From Macrostomum lignano (taxonomy: Eukaryota): 61,508 bases of DNA. The position numbers were made by a program, and so were the translations under genes. Positions 83 to 14,998 of this stretch are shown piece by piece. The notes under the pieces are model-generated. The model worked only from the letters and a program-made list of their open reading frames with translations, ran no database searches and was not told the origin of the DNA. The DNA is taken from positions 1 to 61,508 of the forward strand of contig NIVC01001821.1 of the NCBI GenBank assembly GCA_002269645.1, given 5' to 3'. The stretch's first letter is position 1, and each line of letters opens with the position of its first letter.

Positions 83-3000
83 TCAGCATTTAATACATAG
101 ATTAACCGCAGATAAACTTACAATAATGAAGATGACGAGAAGCAGTAAGAAGCCGCCGCCCAAACAGCAGACCAGCACAATAAGGGTCAGATAGCTGGGA
201 CTGCTGCCGCCGCCGCCGCCGCCGACACCGCCGCCACCAGGCTGCTGCTGAGTCGTGGAAGCCAGCGGTGCCGTCGACATTTTGGTTGCAGAAGTTGAAG
301 TCGGACTCGGCGTGGACAAATCTGCGGATTTTTCGGGATGGAAACAGTTTGTTAAAAAGAACAGCTGGACAGAGGAGCAAAGTATCTCGACTCCGTCTGC
401 GGCCATATTAACTTGGGTCTCGTGTGCGAAAACTGACTTAGGTTAGGTCTTGTCGTGCAATTCTCACCCACGAGGGCCAACCCCAAGGCTCAGTATGTAC
501 ATGCTTGACGATGAGAAAGTCAGGGCCGCTGTACAGCCTGTGTGTGTGTGTGTGTGTGTGTGTGCTCAAGAATCTGCTGCCAGCAGGTCGACTGTCGCCT
601 TTATTTGCATCATCGCCCAAAGCTTGCAGAGATCGGCAGGCTGATTCATACTGCCAGGCCAGGGCATCGTCCACAAGCCAGGATTCTGCTTTTGAACCGA
701 CCAAAAACTTTACCGCTTTGCCTATACTATCCTACCAGCCTGTGTGTAGATAATTAGCTCTTGTAACGAATGAAGAGTACTGTTGCACTTTACTAAACTG
801 CATAGTTCAATAAATTTGCAATTTATTGATTTCCAAACGTTGTGCTTCATACAGTTCTTACCTGGCGAGCCAACACTATCGATAACAATGCCTCCAAGCT
901 CCATAGTGCTGAGACCTTTTTGCAATAAGCTGAGCAGGGTCGCCGCCGTGTTGGTGGGGCTGTCCCGGACAACAAGATAAAAGGTTGCCTTGACGCTGCC
1001 CTCAGCAAAAACGATGTTAACCACATCCTGCAGCTCTAAATAGAGATCAGTCTGTCTAGCTGCTGCCATTATGGTCTCAACGAGATAGTTCGACAGCTGC
1101 TTGTATCGCCAAGTACCTGCGTTTAGATATTCGTTGAACCATTGCATATTGGCGAAACGCAGGCTCATTTTTATGGCCTTTACTCGCGGAAACACTGGCT
1201 GGTAATTTGTTGGACAAATGCACGCAGTTGTCGCGCTGGGGACTGTAGTCGTAGTCATGGTTGTTGTTGAAGTTGTAGTCGGAGTAGTTGTAGTTGTTGT
1301 TGGTGTAGTAGTTGTTGTGGGTGTGGTGGTAGTTGTGGGTGTGGTAGTTGTTGTGGTGTGGTGTAGTTGTTGTGGGTGTGGTGGTAGTTGTTGTGGTGTG
1401 GTGGTAGTTGTGGGTGTGGTGGTAGTGTGTGTGGTGGTAGTGTGGTGGTAGTTGTTGTGGGTGTGGTGGTAGTTGTTGTGTTGGTGTAGTTGTTGTGGTG
1501 TGGTGGTAGTTGTTGTGGGTGTGGTGGTAGTTGTTGTGGGTGTGGTGGTAGTTGTTGATGTTGTAGTACTACTTTTAGTCGATGATGTACTGCCTGTTGT
1601 TGGTGTTACTAGGGTAGTTTTAGTCGAAGTTGTAGTCGGTGTAGTTGTACTTTTCGTAGTTGTAGGCGTTGTAGTTGCAGTTGTAGTCGTTGTTGTGGTA
1701 CTTGTGACGCACACGGGATTAATCGGCGCAAAGCAGCCTACGATTTCTAAATAAGTTTCAAAATTTGATTTCGACTCTGCGTACGACTTCAGCGCTCTTG
1801 GGGTGACAGTAAACTCGGCCACTTGAAAACCAATGGTGTAGCACAGATCCCTGCCAAAGACATCATTTGACAGAGACAGAGACGATGTAAGGGTTTGGAA
1901 CAGGACTGTCTGTCTGTACTGAATCGTAGCTTCCTTGATGTTTCCTGATAGACAGATCTAAAAAGAATCGTTTGGATTCGAGCAGTCTTGAGAATAAAAC
2001 CCTTGTTTTCTATAAAAAGTTCGCATTGTTGCACGAAAAACTCTAGGGAATTACCCGATCAACGTAGATAGCGGATCTGCAGTTTCTAGCTGTGAGGTCG
2101 ATCGCTAGCCGACCGCCGCCCGTCGTGCTAATGCTAAAGCCTATGGCGTCGTTGTATGCATCGTGGCCAGATATGAACTGCATTGGTAGATACTCCAGCC
2201 GGGATAGTGCGTTTACCAATGGGCAGACTGAAAATTTGTTGAAGAAGGGCGCCCTGAGTTTTCGCAATTGAAAATGTTTAATGGGTCACTACTTTGAAGA
2301 TAATAATTGAACAGCTGATCTCGCGGTCACCTGGCAGGCGACTTGCTAAAGGTTGAATTGTTAAGGTTCAAGGCCATCTGTTTTAAGCAAGTCTTATCTG
2401 CTAGCTAAAAAATCTACGAGCGTATCTTCTTTCACCTTCCGTCACCCTAACATTCCCATTTTGGTTCCGATGGCCCTCTGCAGCTCAGAATGCCAGAGGT
2501 TGTACAAACGTTAAATTCAATTTTTTCTTACAAGTAGAAGTGAAAGTGGTTGTTGTTGGCGTTGTTTGAGTCGTAGTCTGAGTTGTAGTGGTAGTTGAAG
2601 TTGTTGGCGGTAGACAGACAGGTAAGGGACTAAAGCAGCCGTTTATTGAAAGGTAGAACTGAAACACCGTAGTAGAGTTATCTGACGATTTCGGCTCCCC
2701 AGGTGCAATAATGACAGTGTGCACGTCGAAGTTGAAGGTGTAACACAGCACTCCCGGCGTGTCAAGTGTGGCAGTCTCAGATTCTTTTAGCAAGGAAAAT
2801 CCACCAGTCAACGCCATCCTGTAGTACAAATTTGACTGCTTCACATTGCCGCCCGTCATGCAGACCTGAAATGTTTAACGAATTGTTTTGATTATTAGCG
2901 TCCCAGAATGAAGTTTATGGAAAACATGATCGAAACTCACCGAGAAAACGTAGGTCGGCGCTCGACAGCCGTTAGCTGTCAAGTCTACTGTCAGGAATTT

Positions 3001-14998: not shown

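What the first reader, a model, noticed from the sequence alone, without database searches (positions are those of the whole stretch)
83..14998. A ~3,100-aa SEA-anchored transmembrane mucin with 13 globular beads on a Thr-rich string
Seen: one phase-consistent 22-exon gene encoding a signal peptide, 13 diverged six-Cys modules each followed by a 30-110-aa Thr/Pro/Ser linker, a SEA domain and a terminal hydrophobic helix. Known: vertebrate membrane mucins (MUC1/3/16/17) combine PTS regions, SEA and TM, but generally do not alternate a dozen globular domains with PTS spacers. Inference: a lineage-specific glycocalyx, adhesion or pattern-recognition surface protein displaying 13 different binding modules on a rigid O-glycosylated stalk.
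Basis: partly seen in the sequence, partly recalled or inferred. Interest (0 to 1): 0.8.

Follow-up and report, generated by a model that had tools for sequence, protein, structure and literature searches.

The report
Flatworm membrane mucin with lectin-fold beads
This is a real, roughly 3,100-residue cell-surface mucin gene of the flatworm Macrostomum lignano whose sugar-coated Thr-rich stalk is interrupted by 13 diverged copies of an uncatalogued domain with a discoidin (lectin-like) fold; it is a new variant of a known kind of protein rather than a new kind.

Summary
On the minus strand of window 83-14998 I rebuilt one phase-consistent 22-exon gene (21 GT-AG introns, 1 GC-AG). It encodes a signal peptide, 13 six-Cys modules of 133-142 aa (23-43% pairwise identity), Thr/Ser/Pro linkers of 28-114 aa, a probable SEA domain and a hydrophobic helix.

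Corrections:
- The gene probably does not end at 83. A perfect GTAAGT donor follows base 122, and the database model of this locus continues into a cytoplasmic-tail exon that lies outside the window.
- The organism is Macrostomum lignano. The locus is already in UniProt, badly mis-modelled, as the 1,346-aa "Membrane-associated protein" A0A1I8G2V1.

New findings:
- The module matches no Pfam family, but its AlphaFold model (pLDDT 90.6) has a discoidin / F5/8-C / CBM32 β-sandwich fold.
- Only 19 of 1.84 billion representative proteins match the module. They are flatworm paralogues plus mucin-like proteins of a chiton, an annelid and unnamed metagenomic contigs.
- A collinear M. lignano paralogue shows the array is old and that each position keeps its own identity.

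SEA-anchored mucins in invertebrates, and mucins with globular beads between O-glycosylated linkers (MUC16, CysD mucins), are already known. Ligand binding and site of expression are untested. Interest is moderate.

The parts
122..14998 (-). In-window part of the mucin gene: 22 exons (the last ends at 122 if the GTAAGT donor is used). Exons, high to low: 14998-14968, 14880-14668, 13881-13282, 12933-12770, 12684-12105, 11578-11406, 11320-10855, 10753-10584, 10417-9871, 9735-8267, 8083-7532, 7189-6805, 5649-5480, 5389-4918, 4798-4632, 4478-3888, 3788-3197, 3104-2941, 2865-2532, 2227-2055, 1957-862, 321-122(83).
   Evidence: open frame of 9,348 nt, consensus splice sites and regular intron phases; database model P0001 shares the start codon, 1,180 residues and the TM.
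14834..14998 (-). Signal peptide (aa 1-26, split by an 87-nt intron), followed by a short Cys motif and the first PTS stretch
   Evidence: sequence inspection: MPRR, hydrophobic core, small residues; same N-terminus in P0001. No signal-peptide predictor was available.
13454..13879 (-). Module M1 (aa 83-224), single exon
12436..12931 (-). Module M2 (aa 283-419), split by a phase-0 intron
11069..11576 (-). Module M3 (aa 531-671), split
10172..10751 (-). Module M4 (aa 744-881), split
9335..9733 (-). Module M5 (aa 983-1115), single exon; this is the module that was modelled
8582..9004 (-). Module M6 (aa 1226-1366), single exon
7838..8431 (-). Module M7 (aa 1417-1553), split
6929..7693 (-). Module M8 (aa 1602-1742), split
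5144..5647 (-). Module M9 (aa 1785-1922), split by the GC-AG intron (donor GCAAGT after 5480)
4230..4796 (-). Module M10 (aa 1999-2136), split
3537..4052 (-). Module M11 (aa 2196-2334), split
2614..3102 (-). Module M12 (aa 2449-2586), split
1709..2225 (-). Module M13 (aa 2615-2754), split
1223..1708 (-). Longest PTS linker (aa 2755-2916). It contains two stretches (1442-1498 and 1358-1396) that read as the Thr repeat in the other two frames.
863..1222 (-). Probable SEA domain (aa 2917-3036) with lead-in [11 protein letters not shown]; the G-S-V motif is at 992-1000
   Evidence: Pfam SEA E=2.5e-4, 21.6 bits, below the cut-off of 26.4. AF2 model pLDDT 70, β-α-β-β-α-β, with GSV in the β2-β3 turn. 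Best Foldseek hit is MUC16 SEA 8vm1, E=8.5e-4. Lead-in and GSV are conserved in paralogue P0004.
122..193 (-). Transmembrane helix, in-window part ([24 protein letters not shown]), ending at the splice donor ATT|GTAAGT (GT at 121-120)
   Evidence: P0001 continues with V-YAVY-SRRMRSDLKQK...
83..121 (-).

Best explanation
This is a type-I transmembrane mucin of Macrostomum lignano, most likely a component of an apical cell-surface glycocalyx. Shown from sequence: a signal peptide; about 1,070 residues of Thr/Ser/Pro linker; 13 disulfide-rich β-sandwich modules spaced along the linker; a juxtamembrane domain that is probably SEA; one TM helix; and, from the database model, a 31-aa basic and acidic cytoplasmic tail. 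Inferred mechanism: the linkers are densely O-glycosylated in the Golgi and become extended bottle-brush segments that hold the modules tens of nanometres above the membrane. The SEA domain self-cleaves at G|SV during folding, leaving a non-covalent joint that can separate under mechanical load and shed the ectodomain. The 13 discoidin-fold modules act as ligand-binding sites through their loops, as in F5/8-C, neuropilin b1 and CBM32 domains. The most probable ligands are glycans, either of secreted mucus or adhesive material or of neighbouring mucin molecules, which would make the molecule a multivalent lectin-mucin. Each module position has its own conserved sequence, so the 13 sites are probably not equivalent. 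My probabilities: membrane mucin about 0.8; modules bind ligands about 0.5; ligands are carbohydrates about 0.35.
For: Single intact 9.3-kb ORF with regular splice phases. Linker composition of 65% T, 13% S and 9% P with mixed Thr codons. Module AF2 model with pLDDT 90.6 and pTM 0.85. 131 PDB matches at E<=1e-3, all of the galactose-binding-domain-like fold: muskelin and CASPR2 discoidin domains, APC10, CBM29, CBM32 (including a Tn-antigen complex), neuropilin b1, FVIII and lactadherin C2. SEA evidence. TM plus tail. The same module alternates with PTS linkers in a chiton 'mucin-2-like' protein and sits beside TIL/VWC domains in an annelid protein. A collinear paralogue has cognate modules at 35-53% identity against about 31% for non-cognate ones, and the same modules are intronless or split. 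M. lignano has a lectin-stainable glycocalyx on epidermal and anchor-cell microvilli, and O-glycans (PNA-positive Gal-β1-3-GalNAc) are documented in this animal (PMC4890501; PMC8621496).
Against: There are no expression data, no glycosylation data and no binding data. No sequence-level link to true discoidin domains: Pfam finds nothing at E<=10, and hhalign against a verified F5/8-C domain gives a probability of 0.2%. The same fold also occurs in non-lectin proteins (APC10, IFT25, muskelin). The excess conservation of cognate modules is equal in strands and loops, so it does not single out a binding surface. SEA is below Pfam's threshold, its model is only moderately confident, and generic ferredoxin-like folds score nearly as well. 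The cytoplasmic tail is known only from a database model whose internal structure is otherwise poor.
Confidence: 0.65

Rival explanations
1. The modules are structural beads, not receptors. Like CysD domains in gel-forming mucins or the SEA repeats of MUC16, they would interrupt the glycosylated rod to set its flexibility, spacing or protease resistance, or to make homotypic non-covalent cross-links between mucin molecules, with no external ligand.
For: The most conserved positions are core features: six Cys, the GNV motif, the IDL strand and GCF. Cognate conservation is no higher in loops than in strands. The fold also serves non-lectin roles.
Against: Thirteen positions have each kept a distinct sequence since an old duplication, which is more than a simple spacer needs. 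Most extracellular members of this fold bind ligands.
Confidence: 0.25
2. It is a shed or secreted mucus or adhesive component rather than a resident glycocalyx protein. It would be made by a gland or epithelial cell and released by SEA dissociation or proteolysis, then act in the mucus layer, the adhesive footprint or reproductive tract secretions.
For: Distant relatives of the module occur in secreted-type proteins with TIL/VWC and cystine-knot-like ends. A cleavable SEA gives a release mechanism. M. lignano secretes large glycosylated adhesives (PMC8621496).
Against: It has a TM helix followed by a basic stop-transfer sequence and a tail. It lacks the vWD, C8 and TIL domains of Mlig-ap1 and Mlig-ap2.
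Confidence: 0.15
3. It is an annotation artefact: several genes, or a decaying pseudogene, joined only by open Thr-rich repeats.
For: The database models P0001 and P0002 splice the linkers out or read them in another frame. The last linker has two compensated frame changes.
Against: No stop in 9,348 nt. All 21 junctions have consensus sites in the right phase. P0001 removes the last strand and two Cys of several modules, breaking the fold. Paralogue gene models and the chiton homologue keep linkers in frame between whole modules. P0001 itself spans the locus from the start codon to the TM.
Confidence: 0.04

Closest known systems
Vertebrate SEA-type transmembrane mucins (MUC1, MUC3, MUC12, MUC13, MUC17) and cnidarian 'mucin1-like' proteins (PMC9080433)
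   Same: Signal peptide, PTS region, one juxtamembrane SEA-like domain with a G-S-V motif in the β2-β3 turn, a single TM and a short cytoplasmic tail.
   Different: No detectable sequence orthology: none of the 19 hits of the exhaustive module-profile search carries a vertebrate name (10 of them were looked up). No EGF domains. The PTS is broken into 14 pieces by 13 globular domains that those mucins lack.
MUC16 (CA125)
   Same: A membrane-anchored bead-on-a-string mucin in which globular domains alternate with O-glycosylated linkers. Its SEA domains are the best structural matches to the window's SEA-like domain.
   Different: In MUC16 the beads are SEA domains in many near-identical tandem repeats. 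Here the beads are discoidin-fold modules only 23-43% identical, each with an old positional identity.
CysD-containing gel-forming mucins (MUC2, MUC5AC, MUC5B)
   Same: Small Cys-rich globular domains interrupt the PTS regions.
   Different: Those mucins are secreted, polymerise through vWD and CTCK domains, and have a different fold. This protein has no vWD, C8 or TIL domains and is membrane-anchored.
Discoidin / F5/8 type C domains and CBM32 (galactose-binding-domain-like superfamily)
   Same: Eight-stranded β-sandwich of about 140 aa with Cys at both ends. Foldseek E down to 1e-6 and TM about 0.6.
   Different: 9-16% identity. No Pfam PF00754 match and no profile-profile signal. Six Cys in the flatworm form and an invariant G-N(V) motif that defines its own family.
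Liolophura sinensis 'mucin-2-like' XP_064614628.1 and Dimorphilus gyrociliatus CAD5117735.1
   Same: They carry the same module family (E 1e-38 and 1e-5 for the whole proteins). In the chiton protein seven modules alternate with PTS linkers.
   Different: Their modules have only two Cys. The chiton repeats are nearly identical to one another. No SEA or TM is seen. The annelid protein has TIL, VWC and a cystine-knot-like end. Both are uncharacterised automatic predictions.
[quoted passage not shown]
   Same: Same animal; very large, repetitive, glycosylated extracellular proteins.
   Different: Those are secreted proteins of 5,407 and 14,794 aa with vWD/C8/TIL/EGF/TSP1/LDL domains and other repeat units, and no TM (PMC8621496). 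This gene is not one of them.

Membership tests
SEA-type transmembrane mucin (architecture class) | N-terminal signal peptide | tested here: met
   By inspection of [26 protein letters not shown]; same start in P0001. No predictor was available.
SEA-type transmembrane mucin (architecture class) | Long Pro/Thr/Ser-rich region(s) | tested here: met
   1,068 linker residues with 65% T, 13% S and 9% P.
SEA-type transmembrane mucin (architecture class) | Dense O-glycosylation of the PTS | not testable with these tools
   Inferred from composition only.
SEA-type transmembrane mucin (architecture class) | Juxtamembrane SEA domain | tested here: inconclusive
   Pfam SEA 21.6 bits, below the cut-off of 26.4, E=2.5e-4. 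phmmer against the PDB finds nothing. AF2 model pLDDT 70 with SEA topology. Best Foldseek hit is MUC16 SEA at E=8.5e-4, but generic ferredoxin-like folds score close behind. The evidence leans positive.
SEA-type transmembrane mucin (architecture class) | G|SVVV-type autoproteolysis site in the β2-β3 turn | tested here: met
   E-G-S-V-K-A at model residues 75-80, between strands 62-74 and 77-87. G-S-V is conserved in paralogue P0004. The motif is present, but cleavage itself cannot be tested here.
SEA-type transmembrane mucin (architecture class) | Single TM helix and cytoplasmic tail | tested here: met
   24 hydrophobic residues lie in the window. The tail SRRMRSDLKQK... is known only from P0001, and its exon lies outside the window.
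SEA-type transmembrane mucin (architecture class) | Orthology to a named vertebrate MUC gene | tested here: not met
   The exhaustive profile search of 1.84e9 proteins with the module found 19 hits, none with a vertebrate name. The SEA profile search found nothing.
F5/8 type C (discoidin) domain, Pfam PF00754 | Match to the family HMM above the gathering score | tested here: not met
   None of the 13 modules matches, even at E<=10.
F5/8 type C (discoidin) domain, Pfam PF00754 | Eight-stranded β-sandwich of the galactose-binding-domain-like fold | tested here: met
   AF2 pLDDT 90.6 with 8 strands; 131 PDB hits at E<=1e-3 led by discoidin domains.
F5/8 type C (discoidin) domain, Pfam PF00754 | Disulfide joining the N- and C-terminal ends | tested here: inconclusive
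   The first Cys is nearly invariant and the 'aCf' Cys is invariant across phyla.
F5/8 type C (discoidin) domain, Pfam PF00754 | Profile-level sequence similarity to a verified member | tested here: not met
   hhalign of A1 against the Pfam-verified F5/8-C domain of P0019: probability 0.2%. Only one target sequence was used, so the test is weak.
F5/8 type C (discoidin) domain, Pfam PF00754 | Ligand binding through loops at one end of the barrel | not testable with these tools
   Needs glycan or lipid arrays, or a structure with bound ligand.
Uncatalogued spiralian 'GNV' module family (defined here) | Significant match to the module HMM, invariant G-N motif and terminal Cys pair | tested here: met
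   19 proteins at E<=1e-3 (one is a low-complexity false hit), with M. lignano, Liolophura and Dimorphilus among those named, plus metagenomic contigs.
Mlig-ap1 / Mlig-ap2 flatworm adhesives | vWD, C8, TIL (plus EGF, TSP1 or LDL) domains and GRK or RP-1/RP-2 repeats; secreted | tested here: not met
   No such Pfam hits in the ORFs or modules. A TM is present. Published descriptions are in PMC8621496.

The most novel reading that the evidence does not exclude
The protein is the missing cell-side partner in flatworm temporary adhesion, or more generally in mucus retention. It would be a membrane-tethered array of 13 non-equivalent lectin modules on the microvillar glycocalyx that grips the O-glycans (PNA-positive Gal-β1-3-GalNAc) of the secreted glue or mucus. 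The force-sensitive SEA joint would act as a built-in break point, so that attachment is multivalent, reversible and sheddable. The same molecule both displays and binds mucin-type glycans, so neighbouring molecules could also cross-link into a self-assembling coat.
Probability: 0.07. Interest if true: 0.8.

Novelty: new variant of a known kind. Interest (0 to 1): 0.45.

Why it matters
Membrane mucins are the main building blocks of animal glycocalyces, but almost everything known about them comes from vertebrates. This gene shows a flatworm building the same kind of molecule (PTS stalk, probable SEA joint, TM) and loading it with 13 diverged copies of a lectin-fold domain that no curated family covers. 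That domain also appears in mollusc and annelid mucin-like proteins. The finding gives three things: a corrected 3,100-aa model for a locus now annotated as a 1,346-aa protein; a definable new domain family for spiralian mucins; and a concrete, RNAi-testable candidate for the molecular composition of the M. lignano glycocalyx, which in this model animal is the surface to which the temporary adhesive attaches.

Tried and rejected
- Sequence-level identification of the module failed everywhere: Pfam on all 13 modules, a profile against PDB sequences (one chance kinase hit) and hhalign against a true F5/8-C domain.
- The word-indexed protein search was of little use. It found nothing with the module profile or the SEA profile, and only four unnamed metagenomic fragments with the cross-phylum profile.
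- phmmer of the C-terminal region against PDB gave only low-complexity noise.
- Exact look-ups of three neighbouring window ORFs found nothing.
- I considered a GPI anchor for the C-terminal hydrophobic stretch. I rejected it because of the GTAAGT donor inside the helix and the basic tail in P0001.
- I considered identity with the adhesives Mlig-ap1 and Mlig-ap2 and rejected it on size and domain content.
- I discounted the UniProt names of the paralogues ('ZP domain-', 'PKD domain-', 'DUF3707 domain-containing'), because Pfam finds no such domains in them.
- P0015 from the exhaustive search is a low-complexity false positive.
- Nucleotide comparison of the window with the paralogue locus shows only Thr-repeat similarity.
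- The loop-versus-strand conservation test did not reveal a binding surface.
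Full report
**Observation**

The window is eukaryotic, and the feature lies on the minus strand. Three-frame translation of 1-15400 shows a series of stop-free segments that carry a repeated two-part protein motif separated by Thr-rich runs.

I scored donors and acceptors for every pair of adjacent segments and kept the in-frame pairs that preserve the motif. This gives 22 exons from the ATG at 14998 to a stop at 83-85, a CDS of 9,348 nt (3,115 aa) with no internal stop.
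- Twenty-one introns are GT-AG with good consensus. One is GC-AG (GCAAGT after base 5480).
- Intron phase is regular: phase 1 in front of each module, and phase 0 inside a module at the same domain position.
- Masking the Thr/Ser/Pro-rich stretches leaves exactly 13 blocks with six Cys each.
- Trimmed Cys-to-Cys, the blocks are 133-142 aa. They align with six invariant Cys columns plus invariant P, G and N, at 23-43% pairwise identity (mean 32%).
- The linkers between modules are 28-114 aa. All linker sequence together is 1,068 residues with 65% Thr, 13% Ser and 9% Pro.
- All four Thr codons are used heavily, and Tandem Repeats Finder sees only loose repeats (63-84% matches in the linker arrays). 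So it is the composition that is maintained, not a DNA repeat.

**Where the gene ends**

The exhaustive profile search returned two earlier automatic models of this locus.
- P0001 (1,346 aa; UniRef A0A1I8G2V1, 'Membrane-associated protein', Macrostomum lignano) and P0002.
- P0001 shares 1,180 residues in exact 8-mers with my model. It differs by three substitutions in M8, so it is this locus or a near-identical allele.
- It starts at the same Met and reaches the same hydrophobic helix, which is independent support for a single gene. But it splices out most linkers, reads one in the wrong frame, and cuts the last strand and two Cys off several modules. As a model of the protein it is poor.
- Its C-terminus is informative. 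After ...LLLLVIFII it continues VYAVYSRRMRSDLKQKIRHDTKILDEVFDDASARYE. In the window, the codons for ...VIFII are followed directly by GTAAGT (last exon base 122), and the tail is not encoded anywhere in the window.
- The ending ...[12 protein letters not shown] at 83 is therefore most likely intron read-through. The gene has at least one more exon beyond the left edge of the window.
- A TM helix followed by a basic stop-transfer sequence argues for a type-I membrane protein and against a GPI signal.

**What the module is**

No module matches any Pfam family, even at E<=10, and a profile of the 13 modules finds nothing in PDB sequences.
- AlphaFold2 on the 13-sequence alignment gives a confident all-β model (pLDDT 90.6, pTM 0.85, eight strands).
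- Foldseek against the PDB gives 131 matches at E<=1e-3, all of one fold. They include the discoidin domains of muskelin and CASPR2, APC10/DOC, IFT25, CBM29, CBM32 (including a complex with the Tn antigen), neuropilin b1, and the C2 domains of factor VIII and lactadherin. TM is about 0.6 and identity 9-16%.
- A profile-profile comparison with a Pfam-verified F5/8-C domain that sits next to one of these modules in P0019 shows no sequence signal.
- The module therefore belongs to the galactose-binding-domain-like fold class but is not a recognisable member of PF00754.

**Relatives**

HMMER read all 1.84 billion representative proteins with the module profile and found only 19 at E<=1e-3. One of those (P0015) is a low-complexity false hit. 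They fall into four groups.
- The two models of this locus.
- M. lignano paralogue fragments with modules and PTS linkers: P0003, P0005 (= PAA49141.1) and P0007. P0020 and P0021 are further members of P0003's cluster.
- An M. lignano paralogue type (P0004, P0008, P0009) with at least four modules without PTS linkers, then CGCSANYRPVF..., a SEA-like stretch, a TM and a long tail.
- Distant members: a chiton 'mucin-2-like' protein in which seven near-identical modules alternate with PTS linkers; an annelid protein with TIL, VWC, PTS, one module and a cystine-knot-like end; and several unnamed metagenomic eukaryote-like proteins with VWC/TIL domains.

A cross-phylum alignment shows that only the G-N of the 'GNV' motif and the C-terminal 'aCf' Cys are invariant, and the first Cys is nearly so. 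Non-flatworm members have only this terminal Cys pair, as classical discoidin domains do. The flatworm form has gained four more Cys.

**The paralogue locus**

I fetched the genomic locus of P0005 (L001; NIVC01003964.1 of GCA_002269645.1) and scanned it in six frames with the module HMM.
- It holds ten modules on one strand.
- Their best matches in the window are collinear: M1, (an extra M4-like copy), M2, M3, M4, M5, M6, M7, M8, M9. Cognate pairs share 35-53% identity, against 25-40% for most non-cognate pairs (a few reach 43%, and the partial p10 more).
- The same modules are intronless (M1, M5, M6) or split at profile position about 57.
- At the nucleotide level, only the Thr-repeat DNA is similar.
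- The 13-module array therefore predates an old gene duplication, and each position has kept its own sequence. It is not a young, homogenising tandem array.
- The excess identity of cognate modules is the same in predicted strands (0.49 against 0.31) and loops (0.47 against 0.31). It proves positional constraint but does not point to a binding face.

**The SEA claim**

- Pfam SEA matches the exon-21 ORF at E=2.5e-4 and 21.6 bits, below the gathering score of 26.4.
- phmmer against the PDB finds nothing, and a two-sequence profile search found no further relatives.
- The window's stretch and that of paralogue P0004 share the CxCxxNYxPVF lead-in and a G-S-V motif.
- AlphaFold2 on that alignment gives a moderate model (pLDDT 70) with β-α-β-β-α-β order and G-S-V exactly in the β2-β3 turn. 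In autoproteolytic SEA domains the G|SVVV cleavage site sits there (my knowledge of MUC1-type SEA domains).
- The best Foldseek hit is a MUC16 SEA domain (8vm1, E=8.5e-4). Two more MUC16 SEA entries score TM 0.5-0.6, but generic ferredoxin-like folds score nearly as well.
- I rate SEA as probable.

**Function**

Shown: the architecture. Inferred: the rest.
- The composition of the linkers, and the documented presence of mucin-type O-glycans in this animal (PMC8621496; PMC4890501), make dense O-glycosylation and an extended stalk likely.
- The SEA motif suggests a non-covalent, force-sensitive joint near the membrane.
- The fold of the modules suggests ligand binding. The occurrence of the family in mucin-like proteins of three phyla suggests the ligand belongs to the mucus or glycan world.
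- M. lignano has a lectin-stainable glycocalyx on epidermal and anchor-cell microvilli whose protein components were not named in the papers I read.
- The gene is not one of the known adhesives Mlig-ap1 or Mlig-ap2, which are secreted vWD/TIL/C8 proteins of 5,407 and 14,794 aa.
- The rival readings are structural beads without ligands, a shed or secreted product, and an annotation artefact. They are weighed in their own sections.

**Comparison with what is known, and novelty**

- The overall plan (signal peptide, PTS, SEA, TM, tail) is that of SEA-type membrane mucins. Proteins with this plan have been reported outside vertebrates, in sea anemones (PMC9080433).
- Globular beads between O-glycosylated linkers are also known: SEA repeats in MUC16 and CysD domains in MUC2/5AC/5B (my knowledge).
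- What I could not find described (literature searches) is the bead itself. It is a discoidin-fold domain family absent from Pfam and, among the hits that carry a name, seen only in spiralian animals. I also found no description of its use 13 times, in diverged and positionally conserved form, on a membrane-anchored mucin.
- I therefore class the finding as a new variant of a known kind, of moderate interest.
- It would become considerably more interesting if the protein proved to be the cell-surface partner of the flatworm's temporary adhesive. Nothing here tests that.

Noticed in passing
window 18747-25328 (-): Ty3/gypsy-type LTR retroelement with three long open ORFs: gag plus aspartyl protease (23322-25328), RT/RNase H (21631-23337) and integrase (18747-21320). 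The integrase ORF runs on into a Cys/Ala/Gly-rich repetitive tail.
   Followed up: partly
window 26947-27358: Run of 412 N, an assembly gap inside an AT-rich stretch (GC 0.26 for 26-28 kb).
   Followed up: yes
window 14050-14588: (AGAC)n microsatellite of about 135 copies at 94% matches, filling most of intron 2 of the mucin gene. It produces long spurious 'CLSV' ORFs and a false hit (P0015) in the protein search.
   Followed up: partly
window 1442-1498 and 1358-1396 (-): Inside the last PTS linker, two stretches read [12 protein letters not shown]... and [13 protein letters not shown]. These are what the Thr-codon repeat encodes in the other two frames, so they are compensated frameshifts, either real indels or assembly errors in the repeat.
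   Followed up: no
window 5474-5479 (-): The intron inside module M9 uses a GC-AG donor (GCAAGT). All other introns of the gene are GT-AG.
   Followed up: yes
window 29186-34929 (+): Cys-rich, PHD-finger-like ORFs (29186-31621 and 31956-32834; no Pfam hit at 1e-4 for the first, the second not scanned) followed by a SET-domain ORF (34216-34929; Pfam SET 1.6e-25). Probably one trithorax/MLL-like histone methyltransferase gene.
   Followed up: partly
window 44312-45106 (-): ORF of 264 aa made almost entirely of (Q)PGYGAPPQ(T)GYG repeats, with no Pfam match. The complementary strand and other frames are also open, as expected for a repeat.
   Followed up: no
window 36253-36816: Tandem repeat of about 33 nt that yields long 'LRCQGLLGES' ORFs in two frames on the minus strand. 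Probably a minisatellite, not a gene.
   Followed up: no
window 47377-48267, 51342-54347, 57885-58376, 59762-60592: Neighbouring genes: flavin amine oxidase (Pfam 1e-37), a sodium:solute symporter family member, an intronless universal stress protein (Pfam 7e-28), and a 276-aa ORF with no Pfam hit that resembles a transposase-derived gene.
   Followed up: partly
L001 2801-3320 versus 7489-8008; L001 9067-9805: In the paralogue locus a 520-bp segment carrying an M4-like module is present twice at 97% identity (recent internal duplication or misassembly). Two modules (p7, p8) need a frameshift to be read, so that copy may be decaying or the assembly may have errors.
   Followed up: partly
proteins P0013 / P0023 / P0017 / P0019 (metagenomic, invertebrate-like): Besides the GNV module, these proteins contain a second, different repeated β-rich unit of about 120-190 aa (C..M...G.VP...L.V...; ...ACIE) separated by PTS linkers, plus TIL/VWC domains. 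This is another uncatalogued mucin bead type.
   Followed up: no
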